DNA of 64,000 nt from Macrostomum lignano (lineage: Eukaryota), in the NCBI GenBank assembly GCA_002269645.1, contig NIVC01000010.1, positions 1,984,001 to 2,048,000 of the forward strand, in the 5' to 3' direction. A program made the translations under genes and the position numbers. The notes beneath the pieces were generated by a model. It was not told the DNA's origin. It saw only the letters and a program-made list of their open reading frames with translations, and made no database searches. Shown here piece by piece: positions 5,866 through 59,173 of this stretch. The stretch's first letter is position 1. Each line of letters starts with the position of its first letter.

Positions 5866-6648
5866 TACTTCGATAGCATCAAGTTTCTTTTTTTTCAGAG
5901 AAAAGACATGTAAAAGTCGATCTGAAACCTCTTTCAATAACTTTCCGTGTTATACATGTCGCAATAATACAAAACTCGTGTGCACCAACATTTTACACAT
6001 GTACATGTATAGGTGTAGATACGTATAGAATCGAGGAATAAAAAATACAAGCAGGTTGCACCACACAGTGCTCAGACGTAGCATGTACACCTGGAGTTAA
6101 AACGGCGAAAATTGCATTTGTATAAAAAATCGATGACAATAGAAAAATACAATGTACATACCTACAGAAAGATACATGTACAATGGGAATGCTAGGAAAG
6201 TTGTGAATCGCATGCAGTTATAAGCAACAGCACAGTATATAGCTACAATATAAGAATTTGTTCAGCACCTTAACTTGATCTGTTGTCAGAGATGGCTTCT
6301 TTTAAGATTCTACTTTGGACATAGATTCTAATTGACCAGAGGGAGGTACCGAATTTCGAAAAAATCTTTAGTTTTAATCGATTCGATCGTCTCAGTAGGA
6401 TTCGATGTCATGTTTATTGGATTCGAAGGTTTTTTCCAATGTGTTTTAATTTTAATAGTGCAAATCAAGTTTAAGTTGTATGTACGACAATTAGGATAAA
6501 TAGGGTAAATGTTAGGTCTTAGGTAGTAAAAAAACCGTACATTGTTCTGACAAAAAACTATGCTATCAAATGAGAAACGCACTTTTTGCACCCGAATAGA
6601 TTTTTAAAAGGGATTTTCAAAAAAAGTCATTTTTTACAATTTTTTTTA

Positions 6649-9700: not shown

Positions 9701-12700
9701 CTGAGTTTTACTTTAGGGTCCTCAATTGTTTTAGATGCTTTTCTGTCTTCATTTACTTGCTCGGAGGCTTCTGAGGAGCCGGATAGAGAGCGTGTTTCAC
9801 CTGTAGTTGAATTTTTATCAGTATATTTTCCGGCAGAACTGGGCTTTGTTGAAACGTTTCTCCGTGCCGTTTCCACCTCAGATGAATCTGATAATTCATT
9901 TGACTTGGTTGTGGCTTCCCGAATTGCCTTGCTTTGTTCTGAACTCACACTGTTGTCTTCTGCTGCTTCGGAAGTTTCAGAAATGGAAGATCTTCCTGAC
10001 TGTTGAGTGTCTTCGACTAGCTCAGATGAATCAGATTGAGACTTATTTTGCTTCCTTCTTGAACTTTTTCCAGCGACCTTTTGTGGTACTTTTTCCGGCG
10101 CAGTTTTTCTCCCATCGTCATCAGATGAGTTAACAGATTCATGTGGTGTTGCTTCGTAAATCACGTTTCTCTGTGCTGGCTTCACACCACTCTCGTCTTT
10201 AGCCTTATATTGTTCTGAAAGCGGCAATCGTTCCGACTGTTTAGCTTCATTTGCGTATTCTGAAGCTTCTGGTGAATCTGACACCAAGATTCTGGGAATT
10301 TCGCCTTCTTCTGATGCATTTGACGCTTTGTCCGAAGTCGTTTTCATCTTATCACTATCAGACGAATTAGATGAGCTAGACAGAGAACGTATGGGCTTCC
10401 AACTAGACTTTGTGTTACTGACTTCTCCAGATGCATCGGATCTTGCTAGTACTTTGCTAATCGTTTCTTTCACCTCATCATCAGATTTAGCCTTAGATGG
10501 CTCTGAAAGCGGCGATCGTTCTGTCAGTTTAGCTTCGTTCACTTGTTCTGTTGCTTCTGATGAATCTGACACCGAGTTGCTCGAGCTTTTTCGTAGCTTG
10601 TTGCCTCCAACCTCTTCTGATGTATTAGGTCTTACTGACGCTTTTTCCGGAGCCTTTTTCGTCTTGCCACTATCAGACGATGGTTCTTTTACAGTGGAAT
10701 CTTGACTCACTTTGCGTTTTGCTGGCTGGATACCATTTTCGGTTTCGGCAGATGCATTAGACAATGAAGAATTTGAATCTCTGGTGTCTTCGGCTTGATC
10801 GGATGCTTCTGTTGAGCCAGACAGCGAATGTTTGGGTTCCCTTCTAGACTTTGTGTTAGCGACTTTTCCAGATGCGTCGGATCTTATTACTGGAACTTTG
10901 TTAGGTGTCCTTTTCACCTTATAATCATCAGTTGAGTCCGATGATTCCAGAGTTTTTGAGTCTTGAGTCATCTCTTGCTGTCCTGGCTGTTTTTCAGGGT
11001 CCTTAGTTGCTTCGGATGAAGACATTGTCTCAATATCTTTGATTTGATTGGATTCTGTTGGTGAATCTAAAAGAGGATGCATCTGCTTTCCTCTTGTCTT
11101 CCGATCATGGACTTGATCCGATGTATCGGAATTTTCCAGATCTTTGTTCAGAGTCGTTTCTACCTCATCGCTATCAGATGAGTCAGGTGATTGTTTTGGT
11201 GTCGATTCCTGAATCATCTCGTCTGTTTCCGGTTTCATATATTCGTCTGTTGGCTCGGGTGCTTCAACTTGTTCTGGTGATTCTAGAGAACGTCTTTGCT
11301 TCGTTTCTGGTTTGTTATTGTTGACTTTTGCTAATGCACCAGGTCGTAAGGATTCTTTGGTTGGCACCACTTCAGCCTCATCTTCAGATGAATTTTTTCG
11401 AGTGACATTGCGTTGTGCGGGCTTCAGTTCACTGTTCGTTGTTTCATCGGGTGCCTGAGAAAATAGAGACCTTTCTGATTGTTCAGACTGATTTGTTTGT
11501 TCAGATGTTTCTGACGAATCTGATTGAGAATCCATGTATCTCTTCTTTGACTTCTCATTGCTGACCTCATCTGATGCATCAGAGCTTACTGAAAATTTTC
11601 TAGGCGTCTTCTCCATCTTATTGGCATCCGTGGATCCAGTTGATTCTTTTGGTGCAGATTCCTCTCGGTGTGATTGCTTCACGTCATTATCCTCTGCCGT
11701 TTTTCTGTCCTTTGAAATTTGAGATTTTGGCTGTGGTCTATTCCGTATTAATTTCTGGTCGGCAGCTTCCTCAGATGAACTTTCTGACCCAGAGTCATTG
11801 CTTTCTTGTATAGAGACTTCTTGTTTTGCAGCCTCATCAGCAACCTCTCCAGCAAGTCCCTTTGATCTTGTTAGTCCAGTGTCGCTATCACTTCCACCTG
11901 GTGACTCAAATTCTGAACTGCTATGATGCTTCTTTTTATGCACTGGCTCGCCGTCTTCCAATTTTTTAGTCGAACGGGAAATCGAAGCATTTTGCGTCTG
12001 TTTCTTCTCTTCATGTGTTGGGATTACGCTTTCAAAATTTTCAGATGAATCTGACGAATCTATTTCCTGCGTACTGGAAGCTTTCTTAGAATCCGCATCA
12101 GGGACAATACCGGATGCATTTGGTCTTCTTGGCATGGCTTTACTTGCATTGCTGTCCGATGACTTGACATCGTGAGGTTCTTGACGTTCTCTTGGCTTTA
12201 CATCCCAAGTTTCTTCAGACGAATCCGATAAGCCACTGTGCGAACGTGTCTCTCCAGTTTTGCGAACTTTCTTGAATTGTTTGCCTCTAGCTTTTTCTTC
12301 TTCAGAAGACGAAGTGGCCTCTTCTGATGACGGGCGCTTAGGAGTTCTCGTCCTTTTTTGCTTAGCGGCGCTATCATCTTGTTCCAATTTAGAAGCTTCT
12401 GTAGGCTCTTTATTGGATCTTTTAACCCCATCATTTAGATTTTCAACAGATGCTATTTCATCGAAATCCTCATCGATATCATTGTCAGTCGCTGTCCCAG
12501 CTAGTAGCTGTTCCACAAGCATGTCGGTATCAGTGTGGCTACTGTCAACTTCTGCCATCATCTCCCTTGTGGCTTTGGCGCATGAAGAATCGGTGTCGGA
12601 TTGCTCGCTGTAAAGATTTCGAGGCTCTTCCTGAGTAAGAAGATTTTTCTGCCCCTCTGAAACATTTGGAGCTTTCGCTGCGATCGCTGCCTCTTCAGAA

Positions 12701-15700
12701 GCAATAACTTCTTCAATTTCTTCAGAGTCTAAGCGCCCAAACTGCCTAGCTTCTTTTTCATCTGTGTTCCGATCTTTCTCGCTAGCGACATCTTGATTTT
12801 GTGAGAAAGTTTTATCTTTACTGAGAGAGGTGTTCTCCTCTGACCTCTTTGGTGTAGCTTTTGCACAAGTTTCTGTCATTTCGGGAGTAGGACTGTCCAT
12901 ACTTTTTGAAGATAAATGAGCATCCGTGTCGCTGTTACTGGCAGAATCGCTCAATGATTCCTGATTTTGCAATTGCTGAGCTAAAATAGACGCACCAACA
13001 TTTGTCGGAGAGTTCTCGATAACAGTCTTAACAGAGTCTATTGAGTCACGAGTTGCTTGCTCATCGACCAGTTGTTGGTTGAGATTAGTTACTCCCGTAA
13101 TTTCAACAGGTGATGTCTTGGGTTTCTGAGTTGTTGGTTCAGGTTTTGATTCACCAGTTAGAGCGTCTTTGGTACTTGACGAGCTACCAGTAGGACCGGG
13201 TTCAGTTTCAGCATCAGACTCTTCCGTTGATTTCTTGTTTGAAACTGTTCCAGTGTCCGTGTCGCTGTCACTGATTTCAACTTGTTCTTTGCGTGTCTCT
13301 ATCGCTGACTGCGGCAACATACCAGAGCTGGTCTGGTCATAATTATGAAATTCTCCATTGCTTAGACTCCATTGTCTTCTTGGCGAGCGTGCTGCTACAC
13401 CATGAGAGCCATCTGTGCTCTCGACCATGCTGTCTGGAACATCTGAAGGCGTAGCAAAGCCGCTATATTCGCTCTGTGAGTTATAGTCATCCTCGGGCTC
13501 AGTTCTCTCCGAAATATCATCAAGCAGGTGAGGCTGGCTTGAATGAATATAATCCTCATGATCATAATCATCGAAATCGAAATTTCGAAATGATATCTTT
13601 TCTGGCGGCAGACTTCGTACATCCGGGTTCTCTGAAATCTGTGACGAGTTAATAGTCAGTGCTGTGTCGTCATCCAATGGCTGAGGCCCTGGAAGATCAA
13701 CGGGCATGGACTTCACCTTCTGATCGATGGGTATCTTCTCAGTTGGTGAAATTTTCTGCTCTGAGCTTCCCTCTTCATCGCTAAAGGATCCTTTGTGTTC
13801 TGCTGGATGGTCTGAAAAAGCCGCCTTTTGCCTGGCTAGTTTTCTTTTTCGTTCCCTTTCTTGTTGACTTTCTTTTGGCAAAGTAGGTTTTTCTGATTCT
13901 GATTCTGAATTCTCGTCCTTATCAGAGACCGACAAAGAGCTCGAGGATGACTCGTCAATACTTTTCCGACAATGGTCTCCAGTTTCTTCATTTATTTTAT
14001 GGAATTTCTCACTGCCAGATTCACTTTTCGGAGGATCTTCTGCTACATGTAGCTCAGTATGATGCCGATTCTGTTTCTTAATCGATTCCCCGTCTTTGTT
14101 AGAGCTCGAATTACTTGACACAGTGCTGTCAGACTTTTGAGACTTTTTATCATCAAATATTTTTTGCTGCTTAACATCATCGGAATCTTCATACATAATT
14201 GCTTCCTGAGATTGTACCTCATCGTCTTGACATTCGAAGTCACTTGGCGTTAAATGCTTATCCCAAAGCTGACTTGACCGACTGCCTTCCTCTTGATCTT
14301 TGAAACCGGATGACGAGACGGGCTCAACTACAGGCTGACCGAAAGTAGTGCCTTCACCTCTATTCTTAAAGTCACAGGGTGTTGCAAGCTGACGGGGACG
14401 AGCGCCTACGTCGGAGTCACCTAATGAGACGGACTCATCTAGCATCCCACGCAAAAGAATGGCTTCAGCTTGATCTTTGGCGTAACTCGGTGAAACGGGC
14501 TCCTCCGCAGGTTTTCCGGCTCGACCTTCGGAGTCACTGAGACAATCAGAATTAATAGAAATGTCTCGGGTATGATTGTCTTTCTGTTCATCTCTGGTGC
14601 AACTCGATTCACCCTCAAGCTGACGAGGAAGCATTGCTTCAGCTTGATCTGTGGTGTCACTCGGCGAGACGGACTCATCCTCAAGCTGACGAGGAAGCAT
14701 GGCTTTAGATTGATCTGTGGTGTCACTTGGTGAGACGGACTCATCTGCAGGCTTGCTGTTACGACCTTCGAGATCACTGGGAGATTTAGAATCATCCGAA
14801 ATGTCCCGGCGATGAGCATCTTTTCGTTCTTCTCTGGTGGCACTCGAATCACCCTTAAGCTCATGAGAAAGCATTGCTTCAGCTTGATCTGTGGTGTCAC
14901 TCGGCGAGACGGACTCATCCTCAAGCTGATGAGGAAGCATGGCCTTAGCTTGGTCTTTGGCGTCACTCGGTGAAACGTACTCATCTGCAGGCTTGCTGAT
15001 ACGACCTTCGGGATCACTGGGAGATTTAGAATCATCCGAAATATCCCGGCGATGGGCATCTTTTCGTTCTTCTCTGGTGGCACTCGAATCACCCTTAAGC
15101 TCATGAGAAAGCATTGCTTCAGCTTGATCTGTGGTGTCACTCGGCGAGACGGACTCATCCTCAAGCTGATGAGGAAGCATGGCTTCAGCTTGATCTGTGG
15201 TGTCACTTGGTGAGACGGACTCATCTGCAGGCTTGCTGTTACGACCTTGGAGATCACTGGGAGATTTAGAATCATCCGAAATGTCCCGGCGATGAGCATC
15301 TTTTCGTTCTTCTCTGGTGGCACTCGAATCACCCTTAAGCTCATGAGAAAGCATTGCTTCAGCTTGATCTGTGGTGTCACTCGGCGAGACGGACTCATCC
15401 TCAAGCTGATGAGGAAGCATGGCTTCAGCTTGATCTGTGGTGTCACTTGGTGAGACGGACTCATCTGAAGGCTTGTTGATACGACCTTGAGAATCAGAAA
15501 CATCCGAACTTTGTCGAGGACGAGCATCTTTCTGCTCATATCTGGTGGCACTCGATTCAACCTCAAGCTGGCGAGGAAGCATTGCTTCAGCTTGATCTGT
15601 GGTGTCACTCGGCGAGAGGGACTCATCCTCAAGCTGACGAGGAAGCATTGCTTCAGCTTGATCTGTGGTGTCACTCGGCGAGACGGACTCATCCTCAAGC

Positions 15701-18700
15701 TGACGAGGAAGCATTGCTTCAGCTTGATCTGTGATGTCACTCGGCGAGAAGGACTTATCCTCAAGCTGACGAGGAAGCATGGCTTTAGCTTGGTCTTTGG
15801 CGTCACTTGGTGAGACGGACTCATCTGCCGGCTTGCTGGCACGACCTTCGGAGTCACTGGGAGATTCAGAATCATCCGAACTTTGTCGAGGACGAGGATG
15901 TTTCTGTTCATATCTGGTGGCACTCGATTCACGCCTAAGCTGGCGAGGAAGCATTGCTTCAGCTTGATCTGTGGTGTCACTCGGTGAGACGGACTCATCT
16001 GCCGGCTTTCTGGCACGACGTTTAGAGTCACTGGGAGATTCAGAATCATCTGAACTTTGTCGAGGATGAGCATATTTTCGTTCATCTCTGGTGCCACTGG
16101 ATTCACTATCAAGCTGACGAGGAAGCATTGCTTCAGCTTGATCTGTGGTGTCACTCGGCGAGACGGACTTATCCTCAAGCTGATGAGGAAGCATGGCCTC
16201 AGCTTGATCTGTCGTGTCACTCGACGAGGCGGACTCATCCTCAAGCTGACGAGGAAGCATTGCTTCAGCTTGATCTGTGCTGGCCCTCGGTGAGATTGTC
16301 AAATCTGCAGGCTTGCTGTTACGACCTTCGGGATCACTGGCAGATTCAGAATCATCCGAACTTTGTCGAGGACGAACATCTATCTGTTCATATCTGGTGG
16401 TACTCGATTCACCCTCAAGCTGACGAGGAAGCATTGCTTCAGCTTGATTTGTGGTGTCACTCGGCGAGACGGACTTATCCTCAAGCTGATGAGGAAGCAT
16501 GGCCTCAGCTTGATCTGTGGTGTCACTCAACGAGACGGACTCATCCTCAAGCTGACGAGGAAGCATTGCTTCAGCTTGATCTGTGCTGGCACTCGGTGAG
16601 ATTGTCAAATCTGCAGGCTTGCTGTAACGACCTTCGGGATCACTGGGAGATTTAGAATCATCCGAAATATCCCGGCGATGAGCATCTTTTCGTTCTTCTC
16701 TGGTGGCACTCGAATCACCCTCAAGCTGACGAGGAAGCATGGCTTCAGCTTGATCTGTGGTGTCACTCAACGAGACGGACTCATCCTCAAGCTGACGAGG
16801 AAGCATTGCTTCAGCTTGATCTGTGCTGGCACTCGGTGAGATTGTCAAATCTGCAGGCTTGCTGTAACGACCTTCAGGATCACTGGGAGATTCAGAATCA
16901 TCCGAACTTTGTCGAGGACGAGCATCTATCTGTTCATATCTGGTGGCACTCGATTCACCCTCAAGCTGACGAGGAAGCATGGCTTCAGCTTGATCTGTGG
17001 TGTCACTCGGCGAGACGGACTCATCCTCAAGCTGACGAGGAAGCATGGCTTCAGCTTGATCTGTGGTGTCACTTGGTGAGACGGACTCATCTGCAGGCTT
17101 GCTGTTACGACCTTCGGGATCACTGGGAGATTTAGAATCATCCGAAATATCCCGGCGATGAGCATCTTTTCGTTCTTCTCTGGTGGCACTCGAATCACCC
17201 TTAAGCTCATGAGAAAGCATTGCTTCAGCTTGATCTGTGGTGTCACTCGGCAAGACGGACTCATCCTCAAGCTGACGAGGAAGCATGGCCTTAGCTTGGT
17301 CTTTGGCGTCACTCGATGAGACGGACTCATATGCCGACTTGCTGGCACGACCTTCGGAGTCACTGGGAGATTCAGAATCATTCGAACTTTGTCGATGACG
17401 AGCATCTTTCTGTTCATCTCGGGTGGCACTCGATTCATATTCAAGCTGACGAGGAAGCATGGCCTTAGCTTGGTCTGTGGTGTCACTCGGCGAGACGGAC
17501 TCATCCTCAAGCTGACGAGGAAGCATGGCTTTAGATTGATCTGTGGTGTCACTTGGTGAGACGGACTCATCTGCAGGCTTGCTGATACGACCTTCCGGAT
17601 CCCTGGGAGATTTAGAATCATCCGAACTTTGTCGTAGACGAGCATCTTTCTGTTCATATCTGGTGGCACTCGATTCACGCCTAAGCTGGCGAGGAAGCAT
17701 GGCTTTAGATTGATCTGTGGTGTCACTTGGTGAGACGGACTCATCTGCAGGCTTGCTGATACGACCTTCCGGATCCCTGGGAGATTTAGAATCATCCGAA
17801 CCTTGTCGAGGACGAGCATCTTTCTGTTCATATCTGGTGGCACTCGATTCACGCCCAAACTGGCGAGGAAGAATTGTTTCAGCTTGATCTGTGGTGTCAC
17901 TCGGCGAGACGGACTCATCCTCAAGCTGACGAGGAAGCATTGCTTCAGCTTGATCTGTGCTGGCACTCGGTGAGATTGTCAAATCTGCAGGCTTGCTGTA
18001 ACGACCTTCGGGATCATTGGGAGATTCAGAATCATCCGAACTTTGTCGAGGACGAGCATCTATCTGTTCATATCTGGTGGCACTCGATTCACCCTCAAGC
18101 TGACGAGGAAGCATGGCTTCAGCTTGATCTGTGGTGTCACTCGGCGAGACGGACTCATCCTCAAGCTGACGAGGAAGCATGGCTTCAGCTTGATCTGTGG
18201 TGTCACTCGGCGAGACGGACTCATCCTGAAGCTGATGAGGAATCATGGCTTCAGCTTGATCTGTGGTGTTACTCGGCGAGACGGACTCATCCTCAAGCTG
18301 ACGAGGAAGCATGGCCTTAGCTTGGTCTTTGGCGTCACTCGATGAGACGGACTCATATGCCGACTTGCTGGCACGACCTTCGGAGTCACTGGGAGATTCA
18401 GAGTCATCCGAACTTTGTCGAGGACGAGCATCTTTCTGTTCATATCTGGTGGCACTCGATTCACGCCCAAACTGGCGAGGAAGCATTGTTTCAGCTTGAT
18501 CTGTGGTGTCACTCGTCGAGACGGACTCATCCTCAAGCTGACGAGGAAGCATTGCTTCAGCTTGATCTGTGCTGGCACTCGGTGAGATTGTCATGTCTGC
18601 AGGCTTGCTGTAACGACCTTCAGGATCACTGGGAGATTCAGAATCATCCGAACTTTGTCGAGGACGAGCATCTATCTGTTCATATCTGGTGGCACTCGAT

Positions 18701-21700
18701 TCACCCTCAAGCTGACGAGGAAGCATGGCTTCAGCTTGATCTGTGGTGTCACTCGGCGAGACGGACTCATCCTCAAGCTGACGAGGAAGCATGGCTTCAG
18801 CTTGATCTGTGGTGTCACTTGGTGAGACGGACTCATCTGCAGGCTCGCTGTTACGACCTTCGGGATCACTGGGAGATTTAGAATCATCCGAAATATCCCG
18901 GCGATGAGCATCTTTTCGTTCTTCTCTGGTGGCACTCGAATCACCCTTAAGCTCATGAGAAAGCATTGCTTCAGCTTGATCTGTGGTGTCACTCGGCGAG
19001 ACGGACTCATCCTGAAGCTGATGAGGAATCATGGCTTTAGCTTGATCTGTGGTGTTACTCGGCGAGACGGACTCATCCTCAAGCTGACGAGGAAGCATGG
19101 CCTTAGCTTGGTCTTTGGCGTCACTCGATGAGACGGACTCATATGCCGACTTGCTGGCACGACCTTCGGAGTCACTGGGAGATTCAGAATCATTCGAACT
19201 TTGTCGATGACGAGCATCTTTCTGTTCATCTCGGGTGGCACTCGATTCATATTCAAGCTGACGAGGAAGCATGGCCTTAGCTTGGTCTGTGGTGTCACTC
19301 GGCGAGACGGACTCATCCTCAAGCTGACGAGGAAGCATGGCTTTAGATTGATCTGTGGTGTCACTTGGTGAGACGGACTCATCTGCAGGCTTGCTGATAC
19401 GACCTTCCGGATCCCTGGGAGATTTAGAATCATCCGAACTTTGTCGAGGACGAGCATCTTTCTGTTCATATCTGGTGGCACTCGATTCACGCCTAAGCTG
19501 GCGAGGAAGCATTGCTTCAGCTTGATCTGTGGTGTCACTCGGCGAGAAGGACTCATCCTGAAGCTGATGAGGAATCATGGCTTCAGCTTGATCTGTGGTG
19601 TTACTCGGCGAGACGGACTCATCCTCAAGCTGACGAGGAAGCATGGCCTTAGCTTGGTCTTTGGCGTCACTCGATGAGACGGACTCATATGCCGACTTGC
19701 TGGCACGACCTTCGGAGTCACTGGGAGATTCAGAATCATTCGAACTTTGTCGAGGACGAGCATCTTTCTGTTCATCTCGGGTGGCACTCGATTCATATTC
19801 AAGCTGACGAGGAAGCATGGCCTTAGCTTGGTCTGTGGTGTCACTCGGCGAGACGGACTCATCCTCAAGCTGACGAGGAAGCATGGCTTTAGATTGATCT
19901 GTGGTGTCACTTGGTGAGACGGACTCATCTGCAGGCTTGCTGATACGACCTTCCGGATCCCTGGGAGATTTAGAATCATCCGAACTTTGTCGAGGACGAG
20001 CATCTTTCTGTTCATATCTGGTGGCACTCGATTCACGCCTAAGCTGGCGAGGAAGCATTGCTTCAGCTTGATCTGTGGTGTCACTCGGCGAGAAGGACTC
20101 ATCCTGAAGCTGATGAGGAATCATGGCTTCAGCTTGATCTGTGGTGTTACTCGGCGAGACGGACTCATCCTCAAGCTGACGAGGAAGCATGGCCTTAGCT
20201 TGGTCTTTGGCGTCACTCGATGAGACGGACTCATATGCCGACTTGCTGGCACGACCTTCGGAGTCACTGGGAGATTCAGAATCATCCGAACTTTGTCGAG
20301 GACGAGCATCTTTCTGTTCATATCTGGTGGCACTCGATTCACGCCCAAACTGGCGAGGAAGCATTGCTTCAGCTTGATCTGTGGTGTCACTCAACGAGAC
20401 GGACTCATCCTCAAGCTGACGAGGAAGCATTGCTTCAGCTTGATCTGTGCTGGCACTCGGTGAGATTGTCAAATCTGCAGGCTTGCTGTAACGACCTTCA
20501 GGATCACTGGGAGATTCAGAATCATCCGAACTTTGTCGAGGACGAGCATCTATCTGTTCATATCTGGTAGCACTCGATTCATATTCAAGCTGACGAGGAA
20601 GCATGGCCTTAGCTTGGTCTGTGGTGTCACTCGGCGAGACGGACTCATCCTCAAGCTGACGAGGAAGCATGGCTTTAGATTGATCTGTGGTGTCACTTGG
20701 TGAGACGGACTCATCTGCAGGCTTGCTGATACGACCTTCCGGATCCCTGGGAGATTTAGAATCATCCGAACTTTGTCGAGGACGAGCATCTTTCTGTTCA
20801 TATCTGGTGGCACTCGATTCACGCCTAAGCTGGCGAGGAAGCATTGCTTCAGCTTGATCTGTGGTGTCACTCGGCGAGAAGGACTCATCCTGAAGCTGAT
20901 GAGGAATCATGGCTTCAGCTTGATCTGTGGTGTTACTCGGCGAGACGGACTCATCCTCAAGCTGACGAGGAAGCATGGCCTTAGCTTGGTCTTTGGCGTC
21001 ACTCGATGAGACGGACTCATATGCCGACTTGCTGGCACGACCTTCGGAGTCACTGGGAGATTCAGAATCATTCGAACTTTGTCGAGGACGAGCATCTTTC
21101 TGTTCATCTCGGGTGGCACTCGATTCATATTCAAGCTGACGAGGAAGCATGGCCTTAGCTTGGTCTGTGGTGTCACTCGGCGAGACGGACTCATCCTCAA
21201 GCTGACGAGGAAGCATGGCTTTAGATTGATCTGTGGTGTCACTTGGTGAGACGGACTCATCTGCAGGCTTGCTGAAACGACCTTCCGGATCCCTGGGAGA
21301 TTTAGAATCATCCGAACTTTGTCGAGGACGAGCATCTTTCTGTTCATATCTGGTGGCACTCGATTCACGCCTAAGCTGGCGAGGAAGCATTGCTTCAGCT
21401 TGATCTGTGGTGTCACTCGGCGAGAAGGACTCATCCTGAAGCTGATGAGGAATCATGGCTTCAGCTTGATCTGTGGTGTTACTCGGCGAGACGGACTCAT
21501 CCTCAAGCTGACGAGGAAGCATGGCCTTAGCTTGGTCTTTGGCGTCACTCGATGAGACGGACTCATATGCCGACTTGCTGGCACGACCTTCGGAGTCACT
21601 GGGAGATTCAGAATCATCCGAACTTTGTCGAGGACGAGCATCTTTCTGTTCATATCTGGTGGCACTCGATTCACGCCCAAACTGGCGAGGAAGCATTGCT

Positions 21701-24700
21701 TCAGCTTGATCTGTGGTGTCACTCAACGAGACGGACTCATCCTCAAGCTGACGAGGAAGCATTGCTTCAGCTTGATCTGTGCTGGCACTCGGTGAGATTG
21801 TCAAATCTGCAGGCTTGCTGTAACGACCTTCAGGATCACTGGGAGATTCAGAATCATCCGAACTTTGTCGAGGACGAGCATCTATCTGTTCATATCTGGT
21901 AGCACTCGATTCATATTCAAGCTGACGAGGAAGCATGGCCTTAGCTTGGTCTGTGGTGTCACTCGGCGAGACGGACTCATCCTCAAGCTGACGAGGAAGC
22001 ATGGCTTTAGATTGATCTGTGGTGTCACTTGGTGAGACGGACTCATCTGCAGGCTTGCTGATACGACCTTCCGGATCCCTGGGAGATTTAGAATCATCCG
22101 AACTTTGTCGAGGACGAGCATCTTTCTGTTCATATCTGGTGGCACTCGATTCACGCCTAAGCTGGCGAGGAAGCATTGCTTCAGCTTGATCTGTGGTGTC
22201 ACTCGGCGAGAAGGACTCATCCTGAAGCTGATGAGGAATCATGGCTTCAGCTTGATCTGTGGTGTTACTCGGCGAGACGGACTCATCCTCAAGCTGACGA
22301 GGAAGCATGGCCTTAGCTTGGTCTTTGGCGTCACTCGATGAGACGGACTCATATGCCGACTTGCTGGCACGACCTTCGGAGTCACTGGGAGATTCAGAAT
22401 CATTCGAACTTTGTCGAGGACGAGCATCTTTCTGTTCATCTCGGGTGGCACTCGATTCATATTCAAGCTGACGAGGAAGCATGGCCTTAGCTTGGTCTGT
22501 GGTGTCACTCGGCGAGACGGACTCATCCTCAAGCTGACGAGGAAGCATGGCTTTAGATTGATCTGTGGTGTCACTTGGTGAGACGGACTCATCTGCAGGC
22601 TTGCTGAAACGACCTTCCGGATCCCTGGGAGATTTAGAATCATCCGAACTTTGTCGAGGACGAGCATCTTTCTGTTCATATCTGGTGGCACTCGATTCAC
22701 GCCTAAGCTGGCGAGGAAGCATTGCTTCAGCTTGATCTGTGGTGTCACTCGGCGAGAAGGACTCATCCTGAAGCTGATGAGGAATCATGGCTTCAGCTTG
22801 ATCTGTGGTGTTACTCGGCGAGACGGACTCATCCTCAAGCTGACGAGGAAGCATGGCCTTAGCTTGGTCTTTGGCGTCACTCGATGAGACGGACTCATAT
22901 GCCGACTTGCTGGCACGACCTTCGGAGTCACTGGGAGATTCAGAATCATCCGAACTTTGTCGAGGACGAGCATCTTTCTGTTCATATCTGGTGGCACTCG
23001 ATTCACGCCCAAACTGGCGAGGAAGCATTGCTTCAGCTTGATCTGTGGTGTCACTCAACGAGACGGACTCATCCTCAAGCTGACGAGGAAGCATTGCTTC
23101 AGCTTGATCTGTGCTGGCACTCGGTGAGATTGTCAAATCTGCAGGCTTGCTGTAACGACCTTCAGGATCACTGGGAGATTCAGAATCATCCGAACTTTGT
23201 CGAGGACGAGCATCTATCTGTTCATATCTGGTAGCACTCGATTCATATTCAAGCTGACGAGGAAGCATGGCCTTAGCTTGGTCTGTGGTGTCACTCGGCG
23301 AGACGGACTCATCCTCAAGCTGACGAGGAAGCATGGCTTTAGATTGATCTGTGGTGTCACTTGGTGAGACGGACTCATCTGCAGGCTTGCTGATACGACC
23401 TTCCGGATCCCTGGGAGATTTAGAATCATCCGAACTTTGTCGAGGACGAGCATCTTTCTGTTCATATCTGGTGGCACTCGATTCACGCCTAAGCTGGCGA
23501 GGAAGCATTGCTTCAGCTTGATCTGTGGTGTCACTCGGCGAGAAGGACTCATCCTGAAGCTGATGAGGAATCATGGCTTCAGCTTGATCTGTGGTGTTAC
23601 TCGGCGAGACGGACTCATCCTCAAGCTGACGAGGAAGCATGGCCTTAGCTTGGTCTTTGGCGTCACTCGATGAGACGGACTCATATGCCGACTTGCTGGC
23701 ACGACCTTCGGAGTCACTGGGAGATTCAGAATCATTCGAACTTTGTCGAGGACGAGCATCTTTCTGTTCATCTCGGGTGGCACTCGATTCATATTCAAGC
23801 TGACGAGGAAGCATGGCCTTAGCTTGGTCTGTGGTGTCACTCGGCGAGACGGACTCATCCTCAAGCTGACGAGGAAGCATGGCTTTAGATTGATCTGTGG
23901 TGTCACTTGGTGAGACGGACTCATCTGCAGGCTTGCTGAAACGACCTTCCGGATCCCTGGGAGATTTAGAATCATCCGAACTTTGTCGAGGACGAGCATC
24001 TTTCTGTTCATATCTGGTGGCACTCGATTCACGCCTAAGCTGGCGAGGAAGCATTGCTTCAGCTTGATCTGTGGTGTCACTCGGCGAGAAGGACTCATCC
24101 TGAAGCTGATGAGGAATCATGGCTTCAGCTTGATCTGTGGTGTTACTCGGCGAGACGGACTCATCCTCAAGCTGACGAGGAAGCATGGCCTTAGCTTGGT
24201 CTTTGGCGTCACTCGATGAGACGGACTCATATGCCGACTTGCTGGCACGACCTTCGGAGTCACTGGGAGATTCAGAATCATCCGAACTTTGTCGAGGACG
24301 AGCATCTTTCTGTTCATATCTGGTGGCACTCGATTCACGCCCAAACTGGCGAGGAAGCATTGCTTCAGCTTGATCTGTGGTGTCACTCAACGAGACGGAC
24401 TCATCCTCAAGCTGACGAGGAAGCATTGCTTCAGCTTGATCTGTGCTGGCACTCGGTGAGATTGTCAAATCTGCAGGCTTGCTGTAACGACCTTCAGGAT
24501 CACTGGGAGATTCAGAATCATCCGAACTTTGTCGAGGACGAGCATCTATCTGTTCATATCTGGTAGCACTCGATTCAACCTCAAGCTGGCGAGGAAGCAT
24601 TGCTTCAGCTTGGTCTTTGGCGTCACTCGGTGAGACGGACTCATCTGCCGGCTTGCTGGCACGACCTTCGGAGTCACTGGGAGATTTAGAATCATCCGAG

Positions 24701-27700
24701 CTTTGTCGAGGACGAGCATCTTTCTGCTCATCTCTGGTGGCACTCGATTCACGCCCAAGCTGGCGAGGAAGCATTGCTTCAGCTTGATCTGTGGTGTCAC
24801 TCGGCGAGACGGACTTATCCTCAAGCTGACGAGGAAGCATGGCTTTAGCTTGGTCTTTGGCGTCACTTGGTGAGACGGACTCATCTGCCGGTTTGCTGGC
24901 ACGACGTTTAGAGTCACTGGGAGATTCAGAATCATCCGAATGGTTTCGGGGATATGCATCTTTTCGTTCATCTCTGATGGCAATCGATTTAGCCTCAAGC
25001 TCACGAGGAAGCATTGCTTCAGCTTGATCTCTGCTGTCACTCGGTGAGACGGACTCATCTGCCGGCTTGCTGATACGACCTTCGGTGTCACTGGGAGATT
25101 CAGAACTATCCGAACTTTGTGGAGGACGAGCATCTTTCTGCTCATCTTTGGTGGCACTCGATTCACCCTCAAGCTGACGAGGAAGCATTGCTTCAGCTTG
25201 ATCTGCGGTGTCACTCGGCGAGACGGACTCATCTGCCGGCTGGCTGACACGACCTTCGGAGTCACTGTTCGATTCAGAATTATCTGTAATCTCTTGGCGA
25301 TGAGCATTTTTTCGTTCTTCTCTGGTGGTACTCGATTCACCCTCAAGCTGACTAGGAAGCATTGCTTTAGCTTGGTCTGTGGTGTCATTTGGTGAGACGG
25401 ACTTATCAGCGTTAGTTTGTTCAGCAGGTAGCTTCTTGTCTAAAGACGCTTTTTTAAAGTCACATATTTGCTGCTTGTTTTCTGCTAACTGCTCAGAAGA
25501 TGAGTCATCATTGTCAGGTACCGGATGTTGTGTAAGTGACCTCTTTTCTGAAGCCGAATTTTTAGTGTCTCTCGTCAGTGGCTCTGATGATGGTGACTTA
25601 TCTGACTCTGAGTCATCAGCGTCACTGTTTAACTGATTTTTCGTGTCTGATTCTGCGTCTTCGTTTTCACCGGCTTGCTCATTAGCTGCAGGCATCTGAT
25701 CGGTGTACGAATCTTTATTTTCACGTGGTCTCAACTTTTTTAGTGATTTCGAGGCTAGAAACGGGTCTTCAGTTTCACTTTTTTGTTGTTCCAAATTTTC
25801 GGCAATCGAATTAGGAGACCCTTCTGAGCTGCGTTCAGTAAGAACTTTAGTTCTCTCAATTGACTGTTTTCCTTGACTGCCCCTCTGGCCATTCTTAGAT
25901 GAAGCTAATGCAGCTTTATTTCTTAAAGGTTTCAAGTTTTCATTATGATAATCCAAGGAAGCTTTCTTGCCGCTTGATTCTTCACCAGAGTCCGATTCCT
26001 TCGTTTCTTTGTTTTGCGATTCTTCGCCGCGTCTTTGTGATAATTCAACATGTTCGCTTGTTGAATCTCTTTGTTCCTCTTCAATTTCTTCAGCAATGCT
26101 CGAACAACTGCTGTCGTTCAGTCGTGAAATAAGCGTTCGGGAATTTCGGTCATCCTTTGCTGACCTCATTGAAGTATCAGGTACTTGTTTTTCAATTGAG
26201 CCTTTCTCCGCCGAAGATTGGGCATCAACTTCGTCGGGTCTATTCTCTCCACCTGGCTTTGCGTTTTCCCTGCCAACAGACTTCAGTTGGCCATCCTGTG
26301 AAATTTTATTCACATTCCCTGTCACACTTGTCTGTCCTTTCCGTTCTTTTTTTGGTTGCCGCTTATTTAGTGATCGACTCAGCATTTCAGTGTCACTCTC
26401 TGGGTCTTCTAAAGCCGAGGAATTAACACCATAGTTGGTTAATTCGCTTATATTTGCAGTCCCAGGCTTTGATTCCGCTTTGGATAGCGGCTCTGTAGAT
26501 TTTCCTTTGGTTTCGGCAGTTTCATTAGGTTGCAAGTTTGAGTAAGTCGATCGGCTCTCTGTAGATTCTTCATCAACTTTAGACTCGTCTGATAAGGAAT
26601 AATCGCTTTTAACGACGTTTGATCTTTCATCCCTGTCAGTGAGAAGCTTGTTGCCATCGTCTGAAACAGTAAAATCACAGCTATCTATTCGACGATTGGG
26701 CGATACCTCTGTAGAATCATCTAGGACAGAGGAGTGGCTTTTCATCTCTGCTCTGTCATCTTTGTCTCTTGTCTGACTCTGCTCACTAATGTCTGAGACC
26801 TGGCTTCCTGGCCTGTTGTCGGTTGAATCTGGTGAATCGCTATCGGTAGGCTGCTGTTTGGAGTTACTGTCTGCTCGATCAAATGGATGTCGGCTTGCGT
26901 CGATAGGGAACATATTAGTATCTTTGCCTTTTGGATCCATTCTTCTAGAGTTTTCAGAAGTCTGTTTTTTATCTTCGTCTGTTGAATCAACCGGATGACT
27001 GCGTAAAGACTGTTGTGTAAACTGGTCGTCCATTTGATCTGTTTTATTCTCTGGCAAGTATTTTGACGACTTAGGACCTCCGTGAGATCTGACGTCTTCT
27101 CTATTAGCATCTGACGAATGAGTTTTACCATCTTGGGTTTCAACTGAATGGTTTGTATCAAAATCCTTAATTGCATCATCTGTACTTTCGTTAATTCCTC
27201 CATTGACTCTTGCCCGTCTTTTGTCACTACTTTTCTCTACACCCTTGTCACCTGGCGGAACGCCTTCGTCACTGCGCCAGGGCGTATCATCTCGTCGCTC
27301 GCTGGTTGCAGCTTTACGCTTTTCAACATCCAATGAAGCAGAGGTGGTATGGTTTGAATGATTAGCGTGACCGCCGCTAACTGACTGAGTGCTGATTGGT
27401 TGCTCATCGTACACGATGGCTCCTTCTTTCTGCACTATGTCATTATCATGGGGCTCCTGATGCTTTGATTTATCCGTATCATGTATGGGTTGATTGCTGG
27501 TTTTTGCGTCTTTACTCGCTTCAGCAAGAGATAGATTATGTGACGAAGCTGCTTTCCGTTTCAAAGATTTGCTTCCTTTAGAATCTGATCTCGTGGCCTT
27601 TTCATTCCGCTTAAAACTAGATTCGCAAGAGTTGCTTTTACTATCATCCTGTGGTTTCGTTGTATCTTCGTAGTATTCACCTTTGACTTGTCGATTGTTT

Positions 27701-30700
27701 ATTGCATCGTCAGCCGCAGGACTGCTTTCTAGTGCACTTGGCAGCTTTACCTCTCCAGATTTAGGAACTAAACCTTCTGAAACGGATTCATCCGTACCAA
27801 TTTCCGAAACATCTCGAGATGTATTCTCATGGCCTTGCGTTTCGGACTGCTTTCGTGGTGCCGCCCGCGAGTCGGTTTGTTTCCTTCCCGGCTTGTTTCG
27901 TGAAGCTCGACCATCTTTGTTGTCACGTTCTGCTTCTGTTGTCGACTTTTGACTGATATCATCGCTTGAGGAATCATAGGCAATATTCTGGTCCTCACTT
28001 TGCTTCTTGACCAGATTCAAATTTTCTGCTGAATCTATTGAACCTTGGCCTGTTTGTTCAGGCCTTTCTACATCGTGTTTCTTTTTCGAAGTATTTCGAT
28101 CCGATTTCAGCTTTCTTTTGATTTTTCGAGCTGACGAATTAGATGATTCTTCATGAGCTTCAGATTCATTAGAGTCAGTGTCCTTGTCTGATGTCTCTGT
28201 GGCATCTTTGCTTTTCTCGCCTTGTAGACTGGCTAGTTCACCTTTCACTGAGCTGACGCGTACCGCATCGCTTCGACTTGTACTATAGTGTTTTTCTTTC
28301 TTCGCAGTCGTTCGGTCTTTCAAACTAGAACCCTCTTGGTCTAGAATAGATTTTTTTTCTGGAGTAAGCCTTAAGAGATCTTCAGCTTTTGAAGAGCTGA
28401 AGCGCTGCTTGTCTGATTGTAGACTTTCAGAGCCTTCTCCGTTATCCGTCAAGTGACTGCCGTGTTCCCTATCGCTGTGCTTACTTTCTGTTTCTGGATT
28501 CTCAGATAGTCGAATTTCGGACTCGCTGCTCTGCTTGTGACGGCTTGAAGGGTGCGTTTCGGACCTAAGTCCTATTTGATCATTGTCTGACGCATGGCTG
28601 CCAGCGCTTAGTTTTTTAGAATTACCGGTATCTGAGGGTTTGTCTGGAGAAGAATCTAGCTGACGACTTTTCACTACAAGACTTCGGTGACCTTCCAACG
28701 GCTTACTTCCTGGATCGTCTTTTGTTAGACCCCGTTGACGACTATCGGAGGCACCACTCCTAGACTTTTCATCCAAAGATTCGTACGAATAATGGTCTGA
28801 GGGTGGCTTCCCTGATCTATCTAATTTAATTCTTAGTTGACTATCATCAGATTTTGGACTTTTTGGCCTGTCATTTGCCGAAATAACTTCATTGCTGTCT
28901 GAGGCATCGCTTCCAGGCACCCTTTTCGAAGAATCAAAATCCGATGAGTAACTGCCTAAATTTTGGTTTCTAGACTTGCTTACTGTCGGGCCAAGTTTAT
29001 AAGCGTCTGCGGCATCGCTTTCAGACTCCTCAGTCGCAGAATTTTGTGAATCTCGTAACTTCAAAGGTCGCTTTCGGCGTTCGTCAATTGCCTGTTCTTG
29101 TTGATAACTGCTAGAATCACGCAAATCAGGACCGTCATTTGTAGAATCATTCGAATGTTTGTCTAATGGCAGCATTCCTGGCTGGCTGTCAGATAGATCC
29201 TCACTTGGAGTAAGTCTCCGATGGTCTGATACATCGACTTTTTCAGGCTCCTTGTTTGTGACATCACTTGGTTGACTATCTAAAGACCTCCTTCTTGACT
29301 TCAATGCTACTAAGTCACTATTTCGATCATCGGATGCAGCGCTATTTGCGTTCTTATCTTTAAAATCCTTCGGAGTCTTTGAAGAAGAAATTTCCGTGTG
29401 TTCTTCAGCTGGTTTAAATTTTCGATTGTCAAGGTCAGGGCTTCCCGACTTTGTTGGATCTGATTGAGGTCCGTCTGAAGACAACATTCCAGATTTATCT
29501 TTTTTTGGATCTGGTTTACAGTCACCAGAGACACGGGATCCAAGCATATCTTTTGCTGAAGTAGCTTTAGGACCGTGGGAGATATCACTTTCAGACATCT
29601 CAGAAGAATCACTTGAATGACTGTCAAGGTTTTGACTTTTCGGTTTGGCTTCGGTTGACTCAAGATGATAATTTTCTGAAGCATCGCTGCCATATTTCTC
29701 ATCGTTAGAATCACATGGACTTTGAGAAGGAATGGTTCTTGACAAAGATGTACTTTCAGTTGGATTAAACTGATGATCAAGAATTTCTGATACATCAGGC
29801 TGATGGCTCTGTGAAGGCAAAAGCCTTGGCCCTCTTGCGGCTGAACCTAGTTGATGGTTGTCAGAGATTTGTCTGTTATGCAATACTTTTGTTGGTCTTG
29901 GCTTAGAGCTATCTGGTGCATCCATTTGAGCATCTGTGTCCGTAGAATCACGCGAATCACTTTCCGAGGGCCTGCTTTCATTTTGGTCAAGAATCTGTGA
30001 TTGGCTTTTTGACTGTAGCTCTCTAGCCTTGCTGTCTACTCGATCGCGTGAATGACTTTCGGAAGATCGCTTTTTAGAACTCTCGTCTTCTCGACTGTTC
30101 AGATCACTGTCAGATGACTGAAGCTTCGGATTTTTGTTAGTTTGTTCGGCTAGGGGCACTCCAGACAGGCTATCAGTTGCATCAAGCTTACTTCTTTCTG
30201 AAGGCAGCATTCCCGATCTGCTCTCAGTTGCGTCACATAATTTACGATTGTCTATAGGCACCCATTCCGCTCCGTCATCAGTTACATCCGGTTTACCACC
30301 GTCTGAAGGCAGCATTCTTGAGATTCTTTCGGTAGCTTCAGGCTGATAATTTTCTACAAGAGGCATCAGCGATGTTCTGTCGGTTGCATCAGGCTGGTTG
30401 CCTTCTGAATACGACATTCCTAAGCTACTCTCGGTTGCATAATTAGGCTGACGACCGTCTGAAGGCAGCATTCTTGATGCCCTTTCGGTAGTTTCAGACT
30501 GGCGATTGTCTGAAGGAAGCATTACTGAACCTTTCTCAGATTCATCAGGCTGTCTGCCATCTGAAGATGGCATTCCTAAGCTGCTCTCGGTTGCCTGAGT
30601 TTGATTAACGTCTAAAGGCAGCAGTCCTGAGCCGCTTTCTATTACGTTGATATCTCGTTGAGAATTTTCTGAAGGCACTACTTTAAAAATGCTTTCAGTA

Positions 30701-48920: not shown

Positions 48921-49006
48921 AAGTACTTCAGAGTAGGAGACACAACTGAATTTGTTTTAATAATTCAGAAAAACGTTTTTTTTTAAAAATATTTTTAGTA
49001 CAATGT

Positions 49007-49012
49007 AATAAA
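49007..49012 (+). terminator. Probable ATG4 polyadenylation signal AATAAA
   Basis: 87 nt downstream of the ATG4 stop, in AT-rich sequence. Confidence 0.45.
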
Positions 49013-49064
49013 TTTAATCAGACAAGGTGCCAAGTTCTCTCAGTTATTTATTAATTGTTGTCTG

Positions 49065-56827: not shown

Positions 56828-56854
56828 AAGCCAACGTTATATTTGGGACGATTA

Positions 56855-58852: not shown

Positions 58853-58854
<2 letters not shown>

Positions 58855-58884
<30 letters not shown>
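58855..58884. repeat. (TC)n microsatellite upstream of the GPCR gene
   Basis: About 15 consecutive TC units. Confidence 0.9.
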
Positions 58885-58887
<3 letters not shown>

Positions 58888-59173
58888 CTGCTTCTCTTTT
58901 ACAATGGGGCGTATCAATGTGCGGGACGACAATGAAAAATGCAGTGCAGCCAACGCGAATAAGGTAAAATGAGTGGAGAGATAGATGGGCGGAGGGACTG
59001 GGTGTATAGTCGCTAAACAGCAGGACCCACCCACGGTACCCACCCATCTTTTTTTGGCGAAGTGGGTGTTTAGCAGTTAAAGCAGAACGAAACAAGGAGT
59101 TGTAATATAGCATCGCCAAACAAAAAAGGTAATATTAAAAATCAGAAGTTGCTTCATTCAAAGCGTCACAGCA

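What the first reader, a model, noticed from the sequence alone, without database searches (positions are those of the whole stretch)
19234..24562. Satellite-like higher-order repeat (1332 nt = 5x174 + 7x66) inside a protein-coding exon
The array is organised like centromeric higher-order-repeat DNA. 66- and 174-nt monomers form 240/306/546-nt blocks, which form a 1332-nt unit present in three essentially identical copies (20566-24561) plus a diverged fourth. A diagnostic variant (gctgaaacg, FSKP) marks the same position in each of the three identical copies (~21271, 22601, 23937). All monomers are multiples of 3, so unequal crossing-over resizes the protein without frameshift. This predicts a length-polymorphic (coding VNTR) protein under frame-preserving selection.
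Basis: seen in the sequence. Interest (0 to 1): 0.7.

Follow-up and report, generated by a model that had tools for sequence, protein, structure and literature searches.

The report
Nested tandem repeats in giant flatworm gene
A 1,332-base block built from 12 shorter repeats occurs four times in a row, almost letter-perfect, inside the 30-kb exon of an uncharacterised, probably unstructured giant protein of the flatworm Macrostomum lignano. The pattern is real in this assembly, but it is a known way for repetitive protein genes to grow, and the copy number has not been checked against reads.

Summary
Window 19238..24577 has period 1332 with one mismatch. That makes four copies, not three plus a diverged one: three are 100% identical and the fourth differs at 1-2 nt. 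Each unit is 5x174 + 7x66 nt, nested as 240 + 546 + 546 nt. It sits inside a larger 96-monomer array (14437..25512).

The array lies in one stop-free 10,056-codon ORF on the minus strand (6853..37023). With five inferred upstream coiled-coil exons, the protein would be about 10,415 aa. It is acidic, Ser/Asp/Glu-rich, has no Pfam or PDB match, and is predicted disordered.

The window is Macrostomum lignano Mlig_3_7, contig NIVC01000010.1. That assembly was built by Canu from PacBio CLR reads and polished with Pilon. GenBank annotates only a 4,503-aa model for this gene.

The most likely mechanism is recent in-register unequal crossing-over or slippage in a length-tolerant disordered region, with selection mainly against stops and frameshifts. 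Paralogue dN/dS is 0.60, and internal indels are multiples of 3.

Length polymorphism of this array was not testable. A second coding repeat in the same gene (51 nt) differs in-frame, 8 versus 10 copies, between two copies of the locus.

Spider-silk genes show the same architecture, so this is a new member of a known kind, of modest interest.

The parts
6853..37075 (-). Giant exon of about 30.2 kb. The ORF 6853..37023 has 10,056 codons and no stop. A likely splice acceptor (ttttctctcattttag) lies just upstream, at 37076/37077.
   Evidence: ORF list, translation, stop counts per frame, acceptor sequence.
14437..25512 (-). Whole coding tandem array of 96 monomers. They are 22 aa (66 nt) or 58 aa (174 nt, which is the 22-aa core plus a 36-aa insert). 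One monomer is 54 aa. ORF residues 3838-7529.
   Evidence: Monomer table, clustering into types, TRF.
19238..24577 (-). Stretch with perfect period 1332, 4.01 units, with a single internal mismatch.
   Evidence: Lag-1332 mismatch list.
23245..24576 (-). HOR copy 1, first in gene orientation, monomers 7-18. Order: L5 s1 | L6 s2 s3 L7 s4 | L6 s2 s3 L7 s4.
21913..23244 (-). HOR copy 2, monomers 19-30. Identical to copy 1.
20581..21912 (-). HOR copy 3, monomers 31-42. Identical to copy 1.
19249..20580 (-). HOR copy 4, monomers 43-54. It differs from copies 1-3 only at 19944 (T here, A in the others), giving Ile instead of Phe in RxSKP.
19944..19944 (-). The only variable site among the four copies. 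The ancestral-looking state (Ile) is in copy 4. The derived Phe is at 21276, 22608 and 23940.
   Evidence: GCTGAAACG occurs only in three copies, and all other L7-type monomers have GCTGATACG.
36324..36748 (-). Second coding tandem array in the same exon: 51 nt (17 aa, MPMGAPVEQQPQQQPQG) x 8.3 copies at 96% identity. The copy of the locus on NIVC01001372.1 has 10 units.
   Evidence: TRF, alignment and unit counts.
37628..43596 (-). Inferred upstream exons: 43596-43439, 41379-41082, 40776-40658, 40379-40237 and 37934-37628. They encode about 340 aa of Ser-rich and coiled-coil-like sequence. The annotated CDS starts at the ATG at 43596.
   Evidence: Gene range in L004. GT-AG junctions and an open spliced frame of 10,415 aa. 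The splice choices are inferred and were not confirmed.

Best explanation
The feature is a three-level nested tandem repeat inside the giant exon of an orphan Macrostomum lignano gene. The gene encodes a protein of at least 10,056 aa (modelled at about 10,415 aa). It is strongly acidic, rich in Ser, Asp and Glu, and probably intrinsically disordered, with an N-terminal coiled-coil-like part.

The hierarchy has three levels:
- An old 66-nt monomer, with a 108-nt insertion in some copies, diversified into types that are 82-92% identical.
- A five-monomer 546-nt block duplicated (99.3% identity).
- A 1332-nt unit (240 + 546 + 546) was then amplified to four copies very recently (99.85-100% identity).

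The likely mechanism is in-register unequal crossing-over or sister-chromatid exchange, or replication slippage, between similar monomers. This step is inferred. Every unit is a multiple of three and the region has no fold to break. Such events therefore only lengthen or shorten the protein, and selection acts mainly against stops and frameshifts. That part is shown indirectly.

Three copies share a derived Phe codon that copy 4 lacks. This implies at least two rounds of duplication after that mutation. The copies are far more alike than the paralogous loci are to each other (2-5% divergence). So the expansion, or its homogenisation, post-dates the locus duplication.
For: Structure.

Coding status:
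- The frame has 0 stops in 10,056 codons against about 510 expected, and the other five frames carry 36-571 stops per region.
- The source record carries transcript-based gene models at this locus. They are 4,503 aa here and 3,783 aa in the paralogue.
- A further model, the 1,976-aa partial PAA50746.1, covers the C-terminal part of another copy of the gene.

Constraint:
- dN/dS is 0.60 over 1,947 codons against the copy on NIVC01003573.1.
- The four internal indels there are 3, 15, 3 and 9 nt.
- pN/pS between monomers is 0.75-1.0, so there is little constraint on residues while the frame stays open.

Disorder and orphan status:
- Ser is 17% and Asp plus Glu 20% of residues, with net charge -654.
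- AF2 gives mean pLDDT 40.6 and no secondary structure for one unit.
- Pfam and PDB give nothing significant.

Copy-number change in the same gene: the 51-nt array has 8 versus 10 units, in frame.

Tandem arrays are common here:
- A 37-nt intronic minisatellite in the same window has its own 249-nt higher-order period.
- The genome paper reports simple and tandem repeats as 15% of the genome (PMC5730564).
Against: - No reads or independent assembly of this array could be examined.
- The assembly was built by Canu from PacBio CLR reads and polished with Pilon using short reads that multi-map in such arrays. The exact copy number and the 100% identity could be partly technical.
- The other loci show gaps around the gene. 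NIVC01003573.1 ends 1.6 kb from the array, and NIVC01002734.1 starts about 10 kb upstream of where the giant exon would begin. So this gene was hard to assemble.
- Expression of the array itself is not shown. By my approximate model, the GenBank model stops about where the identical copies begin.
- The mechanism is inferred from the pattern, not observed.
- The disorder prediction used a single sequence.
Confidence: 0.72

Rival explanations
1. Assembly or polishing artefact. The true locus has fewer or more 1332-nt units, for example one Ile-type and one Phe-type. The four near-identical copies would then result from Canu mis-resolving CLR reads from three similar loci, with Pilon homogenising the copies.
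For: - The assembly method was Canu 1.4 on CLR reads with Pilon polishing from Illumina and RNA-seq data.
- The genome paper's REAPR check called only 64% of bases error-free.
- The assembly holds three copies of the locus, and the third is represented only by contigs that stop short of the array.
- Three copies being exactly identical is unusual.
Against: - The array is only 5.3 kb, within reach of CLR reads.
- The 30-kb ORF is intact, so the consensus quality is good.
- A private variant is kept in exactly three of four copies, and the flanks are distinct.
- Paralogous loci differ by 2-5%, so mixing them would not give 100% identity.
Confidence: 0.2
2. The repeat number and the perfect homogeneity are themselves selected. 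Under this reading the 444-aa unit is a functional module, for instance a multivalent binding or phosphorylation scaffold. Concerted evolution would then be maintained by selection rather than being a near-neutral by-product.
For: - The conserved core motif DQAEAMLPRQLE recurs in nearly all 96 monomers.
- There are many S-x-E and S-x-D motifs.
- In spider MaSp1, extreme homogenisation has been discussed as possibly selected (PMC1885213).
Against: - pN/pS between monomers is 0.75-1.0.
- No fold is predicted.
- No homologue outside Macrostomum lignano was detected, although two of the three searches were unreliable.
- Four copies that differ by at most one substitution carry no information on selection.
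Confidence: 0.12
3. It is a non-coding satellite or minisatellite that merely happens to be open. On this reading the giant ORF is not a real protein-coding exon.
For: - No homologue or domain was found.
- The GenBank model is truncated, apparently near the start of the identical copies (my approximate model).
- Residue-level constraint inside the array is weak.
Against: - There are zero stops in 10,056 codons against about 510 expected, including 6,364 codons of non-repetitive sequence.
- dN/dS is 0.60, and the indels against a paralogue are in frame.
- Canonical splice sites join upstream exons in frame.
- The GenBank gene models for both ends of the gene come from the genome paper's RNA-seq-guided annotation.
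Confidence: 0.03

Closest known systems
Higher-level repeats in single-exon spider dragline silk genes (Latrodectus hesperus MaSp1 and MaSp2; Ayoub et al. 2007, PMC1885213)
   Same: - Both are very large single coding exons.
- Short motifs group into ensemble repeats, which group into a higher-level unit. In MaSp1 that unit is about 120 aa, repeated 20 times at 97.5% nt identity.
- Homogenisation is attributed to unequal crossing-over.
   Different: - Silk is Gly/Ala-rich and secreted, with conserved N- and C-terminal domains.
- This protein is Ser/Asp/Glu-rich and acidic, with no signal peptide seen in the modelled N-terminus and no conserved terminal domain.
- There are only four units here, but each is larger (444 aa) and they are more alike (99.85-100%).
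Centromeric alpha-satellite higher-order repeats
   Same: Monomers diverge by 10-20% within a unit, while whole units are nearly identical. Unequal exchange is the accepted explanation (general knowledge).
   Different: - Alpha satellite is non-coding, with hundreds to thousands of units and a centromere function.
- Here there are four units inside an ORF, with monomer lengths constrained to multiples of 3 and two monomer lengths (66 and 174 nt).
Coding VNTRs and macrosatellites in animal genes. Examples are the human LPA KIV-2 repeat, mucin tandem-repeat exons and filaggrin (my own knowledge), and the Chironomus Balbiani ring genes (PMC4192438)
   Same: In-frame tandem units change protein length. 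Such arrays are often missing or truncated in assemblies and annotations. The central tandem-repeat regions of the BR genes were not recovered in the Chironomus tentans draft genome.
   Different: - Those proteins are secreted or structural, with known roles and documented allele-length variation.
- For this array, neither the function nor the polymorphism is known.
GenBank models for the same gene in Macrostomum lignano. PAA50746.1 is BOX15_Mlig005348g1, partial. There are also unnamed models of 4,503 aa and 3,783 aa.
   Same: They cover the same gene or its paralogues. PAA50746.1 is 86% identical to ORF residues 8857-10040.
   Different: All are fragments, and the 4,503-aa and 3,783-aa models are each too short to span the array. 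The full protein of about 10,400 aa and its HOR are not represented in the records I could reach.

Membership tests
Higher-order repeat (HOR) tandem array, structural definition | Two or more distinguishable monomer types that are clearly diverged from each other | tested here: met
   Seven monomer types occur per unit (L5, L6, L7, s1-s4). Identity between types is 82-92%.
Higher-order repeat (HOR) tandem array, structural definition | The multi-monomer unit is repeated head to tail, with much higher identity between units than between monomers | tested here: met
   There are four units of 1332 nt at 99.85-100% identity, and lag-1332 identity is 99.95%.
Centromeric or satellite DNA | Long non-coding arrays of hundreds of units or more, at a centromeric or heterochromatic location | tested here: not met
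   There are four units (96 monomers, 11 kb in all), inside an ORF and flanked by ordinary genes: Atg4, ABCD and a family-C GPCR. Chromosomal position was not testable.
Coding VNTR (length-polymorphic in-frame tandem repeat) | The repeat lies in an ORF and the unit length is a multiple of 3 | tested here: met
   Units are 66, 174, 162, 546 and 1332 nt, and the frame stays open throughout.
Coding VNTR (length-polymorphic in-frame tandem repeat) | Copy number differs between alleles, individuals or gene copies | tested here: inconclusive
   This was not obtainable for the 1332-nt array. The 51-nt array in the same exon has 8 versus 10 copies between two copies of the locus.
Coding VNTR (length-polymorphic in-frame tandem repeat) | The repeat is transcribed and translated | not testable with these tools
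   The GenBank models come from the genome paper's RNA-seq-guided annotation. They cover the 5' part here and the 3' part in a paralogue, but not the array.
Spidroins | Conserved spidroin N- and C-terminal domains and Gly/Ala-rich repeats | tested here: not met
   There are no Pfam hits in either flank. Gly is 1.8% of array residues.
Mucins | A Pro/Thr/Ser-rich repeat domain together with a signal peptide and VWD, SEA or Cys-rich domains | tested here: not met
   The array is Ser/Asp/Glu/Ala-rich, with Thr at 5.6% and net charge -353. No such domains were found. The modelled N-terminus has no obvious hydrophobic signal sequence (by eye).

The most novel reading that the evidence does not exclude
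The gene encodes one of the largest single-exon proteins described in an animal, about 10,400 aa from a 30.2-kb exon. It would be a flatworm-specific, highly acidic disordered scaffold. Its central array would be turning over fast enough that paralogues, haplotypes and laboratory lines differ by kilobases, giving heritable protein-length variation with a phenotypic effect.
Probability: 0.15. Interest if true: 0.5.

Novelty: new member of a known kind. Interest (0 to 1): 0.3.

Why it matters
- It is a clean, small example of higher-order repeat formation inside a reading frame, in a laboratory model animal where RNAi and transgenesis are available. Three nested ages of duplication can be read directly from the sequence.
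- The GenBank annotation of this gene appears badly truncated: 4,503 aa against about 10,400 aa. Other copies of the locus are fragmented at this gene in the assembly. This matters to anyone using the M. lignano gene set.
- If copy number varies between lines, the array would make a convenient marker. It would also be a test case for how much length change a disordered protein tolerates.
- None of this changes current understanding of repeat evolution.

Tried and rejected
**Homology searches with the word-indexed tool.** I used the C-terminal 700 aa and the array plus its upstream flank. Both returned nothing. These negatives are unreliable. The exhaustive HMMER search found PAA50746.1, which overlaps the region queried and should have been hit there. 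Low-complexity words probably saturated the candidate list.

**Fetching the paralogous array on NIVC01001372.1.**
- The 10-kb flank limit stops short of the array.
- I rebuilt the annotated 4,503-aa protein from the window with two splice variants, hoping to reach the paralogue through its cluster.
- Neither variant is in the collection.
- My splice model or its 3' end is therefore not exactly the annotated one.

**Domain and structure searches.**
- Pfam on both unique flanks, the candidate upstream exons, the spliced N-terminus and the HOR unit gave only sub-threshold coiled-coil noise.
- One Rep-A_N hit was an artefact of summing repeated weak matches. No single stretch passed on its own.
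- PDB sequence searches gave nothing beyond a weak lamin coiled-coil hit at E = 0.067.
- I made no fold search, because the model has pLDDT 40.6 and would give meaningless matches.

**Other checks.** Rfam and tRNA scans of the window were empty. Searching papers, and the supplements of the genome paper, for the locus name Mlig005348 found nothing.

**Identities rejected.** On composition and absence of domains, I rejected mucin, spidroin and secreted adhesive-protein identities.
Full report
**1. What is in the sequence**

TRF reports overlapping periods of 66, 174, 240, 306, 414, 480 and 546 nt over roughly window 17-25.4 kb. The stretch with perfect period 1332 is 19238..24577, with one internal mismatch: 19944 versus 21276.

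The unit at 19234 matches them at 1330 of 1332. There are therefore four near-identical copies. The 'diverged fourth' copy in the finding is in fact 99.85% identical.

**2. Anatomy**

The array lies in one ORF on the minus strand, 6853..37023, of 10,056 codons. I anchored on the recurring motif DQ[AS][EK][AT][MI][LI][PSL] and split one 80-aa segment into 22 + 58 aa. This gives 96 monomers: 52 of 22 aa (66 nt), 43 of 58 aa (174 nt) and one of 54 aa. They span ORF residues 3838-7529, window 14437..25512. A 58-mer is a 22-aa core preceded by a 36-aa insert.

Clustering monomers at 96.5% nucleotide identity or above gives this order:

L5 s1 | L6 s2 s3 L7 s4 | L6 s2 s3 L7 s4

This order is repeated four times, as monomers 7-18, 19-30, 31-42 and 43-54. 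In the register that follows monomer boundaries, the copies are:
- copy 1: 23245-24576
- copy 2: 21913-23244
- copy 3: 20581-21912
- copy 4: 19249-20580

The three levels show different identities:
- Different monomer types within a unit are 82-92% identical.
- The two inner 546-nt blocks are 99.27% identical.
- Whole units are 99.85-100% identical.

The flanking monomers (1-6 and 55-96) are a mosaic of the same and related types. They are 97.7-100% identical to their counterparts inside the core. The four units are therefore the youngest layer of an older, continually rearranged array.

Copy 4 and every other L7-type monomer have GCTGATACG (Ile). Phe is thus a derived state shared by three copies. 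This implies at least two duplication steps after that mutation.

**3. Is it coding?**

The ORF frame has 0 stops in 10,056 codons, where base composition predicts about 510. The other five frames have between 36 and 571 stops per region. The 6,364 non-repetitive codons are as open as the array.

A strong acceptor (ttttctctcattttag) lies just upstream of the ORF. Five upstream ORF pieces can be joined by GT-AG introns into an open 10,415-aa product, or 10,423 aa with an alternative junction. These splice choices are inferred.

**4. Source of the window**

The neighbouring family-C GPCR ORF (59174..61609) is 97% identical to a Macrostomum lignano protein. The contig look-ups show that locus L004 is 100% identical to window 41972..64000. 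L004 is NIVC01000010.1, positions 2,025,972-2,050,827, from assembly GCA_002269645.1. The window is therefore M. lignano Mlig_3_7, contig NIVC01000010.1, positions 1,984,001-2,048,000.

GenBank annotates a minus-strand gene starting at the ATG at window 43596, with a 4,503-aa product. With my splice model, that length would end 6-14 residues before the first HOR copy. This fits an annotation that stops where reads start to multi-map. It is only approximate, because my reconstructions were not exact matches.

**5. Other copies of the locus**

The same assembly holds two more copies of the Atg4-ABCD-GPCR neighbourhood.
- NIVC01001372.1 carries a 3,783-aa model of the giant gene, which runs off the fetched locus.
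- NIVC01002734.1 begins only 2 kb upstream of Atg4.
- NIVC01003573.1 ends inside the giant gene, 1.6 kb from the array. It carries the partial 1,976-aa PAA50746.1.

These copies allow three tests.

- **(a) Substitutions and indels.** Against NIVC01003573.1, the C-terminal unique region is 96.2% identical in DNA.
  - The four internal indels are 3, 15, 3 and 9 nt. One further 1-nt indel lies about 50 nt before the stop.
  - dN/dS is 0.60 over 1,947 codons.
  - This indicates weak purifying selection on residues and clear selection on the frame.
- **(b) The 51-nt array.** Against NIVC01001372.1, the 51-nt coding array at 36324..36748 has 8 units here and 10 there. This is an in-frame 102-nt difference in otherwise 98-99% identical sequence.
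- **(c) Relative age.** The loci differ by 2-5% while the HOR copies differ by 0-0.15%. The amplification or homogenisation of the HOR is therefore younger than the locus duplication.

I could not retrieve any other copy of the 66/174-nt array itself.

**6. Nature of the protein**

Over the whole protein, Ser is 17.1%, Asp 10.3% and Glu 9.4%, with net charge -654. The array alone has net charge -353.

No Pfam family reaches threshold in the flanks, the modelled N-terminus or the unit, and there is no PDB relative. A single-sequence AF2 model of one unit has mean pLDDT 40.6 and no secondary structure. That fits disorder, with the usual caveat for predictions made without an alignment.

Between monomers, pN/pS is 0.99 for the 66-mers and 0.75 for the 174-mers. 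Residue identity is barely constrained while the frame is preserved. Function remains unknown. The best guess, marked as inference, is a giant acidic and probably phosphorylated disordered scaffold attached to a coiled-coil N-terminus.

**7. Mechanism**

The pattern is what repeated in-register unequal exchange or slippage between similar monomers produces. It consists of nested units, breakpoints that coincide with monomer boundaries, identity that rises with unit size, and a derived variant spread to three copies.

A non-coding 37-nt minisatellite in an intron of the same gene (38834..40083) has its own 249-nt higher-order period. The genome paper puts simple and tandem repeats at 15% of the assembly (PMC5730564). 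The process is therefore general in this genome.

What is specific to the coding arrays is the period. Those inside the ORF have periods of 51, 66, 174 and 156 nt. The non-coding arrays in the window have periods of 37, 34, 28, 20, 30, 32, 40 and 13 nt.

**8. Caveat on the assembly**

Mlig_3_7 was built with Canu 1.4 from PacBio CLR reads and polished with Pilon using Illumina and RNA-seq reads. REAPR called 64% of its bases error-free. Short reads multi-map in identical units, so polishing can homogenise copies. CLR assembly can also miscount units.

Several points argue against a gross artefact:
- The array is short, at 5.3 kb.
- The 30-kb frame is intact.
- A variant is kept in exactly three of four copies.
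- Mixing the 2-5% diverged paralogues could not yield identical units.

I put about 0.2 on the copy number or identity being materially wrong.

**9. Comparison with known cases**

Nested coding repeats in giant exons are well documented. Black-widow MaSp1 is a single 9.4-kb exon. Four ensemble repeat types form a unit of about 120 aa that is repeated 20 times at 97.5% nt identity. The authors invoke unequal crossing-over (PMC1885213).

[quoted passage not shown] Human coding VNTRs such as LPA KIV-2, mucins and filaggrin are further examples, from my own knowledge.

The resemblance to centromeric HORs is structural only.

**10. Verdict**

The HOR structure, coding context and frame preservation hold. 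Length polymorphism is plausible and supported for a sister array, but it is untested for this one.
- This is a new member of a known kind, of modest interest.
- The practical by-products are the apparently truncated annotation and the identification of an orphan protein of about 10,400 aa.

Noticed in passing
window 36324..36748 (minus strand, same exon): A second coding tandem repeat: 51 nt (17 aa, MPMGAPVEQQPQQQPQG) x 8.3 copies at 96% identity. The copy of the locus on NIVC01001372.1 (L002) has 10 units, an in-frame 102-nt difference.
   Followed up: yes
window 6853..43596 (minus strand): GenBank annotates only a 4,503-aa product for this gene, and 3,783 aa plus a 1,976-aa partial in the other copies. 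The open spliced frame gives about 10,415 aa, so the annotation appears truncated near the start of the identical repeat units.
   Followed up: partly
L001/L003 (NIVC01002734.1), L002 (NIVC01001372.1), L005 (NIVC01003573.1): The assembly has three copies of the giant-gene, Atg4, ABCD and GPCR neighbourhood, 90-98% identical to the window. One contig starts 2 kb upstream of Atg4 and another ends 1.6 kb from the array. This fits the redundancy reported for the DV1 line and shows the gene was hard to assemble.
   Followed up: partly
window 38834..40083: A 37-nt minisatellite (34 copies, 89% identity) in a putative intron of the giant gene. It has its own higher-order period of 249 nt (4.9 copies, 92% identity).
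   Followed up: no
window 47754..48465 and 49070..50809: Dense minisatellites within or just beyond the Atg4-like gene region: 28 nt x 12.5 at 99% identity, 20 nt x 16.8, and 30 nt x 58. The last one explains the strong GC skew (-0.4 to -0.5) at 48-52 kb.
   Followed up: no
window 56128..56382 versus L001 6505..8035: A short-period repeat (13 nt by TRF) within the ABCD transporter gene region. It is about 250 nt here but about 1.5 kb in the paralogous contig NIVC01002734.1. This is a large copy-number difference between copies of the locus.
   Followed up: no
window 6853..6910 versus L005 about 5890..6016: A 1-nt indel about 50 nt before the stop gives the two gene copies different C-terminal tails. 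UniRef A0A1I8GXB1 (191 aa, named 'MAST3') matches the last 150 aa at 95% identity and runs 41 aa beyond them. The name looks like an automatic label.
   Followed up: no
tool behaviour (versus 44): The word-indexed protein search missed a relative (PAA50746.1, 86% identical) overlapping the low-complexity query, which the exhaustive HMMER search found. Negative results from the indexed tool on Ser/Asp/Glu-rich queries should not be trusted.
   Followed up: yes
window 59174..61609 (+): An 811-aa ORF for a family-C GPCR with ANF_receptor and 7tm_3 domains. The GenBank model PAA94493.1 for this contig is 954 aa, so the model includes further sequence beyond this ORF.
   Followed up: no
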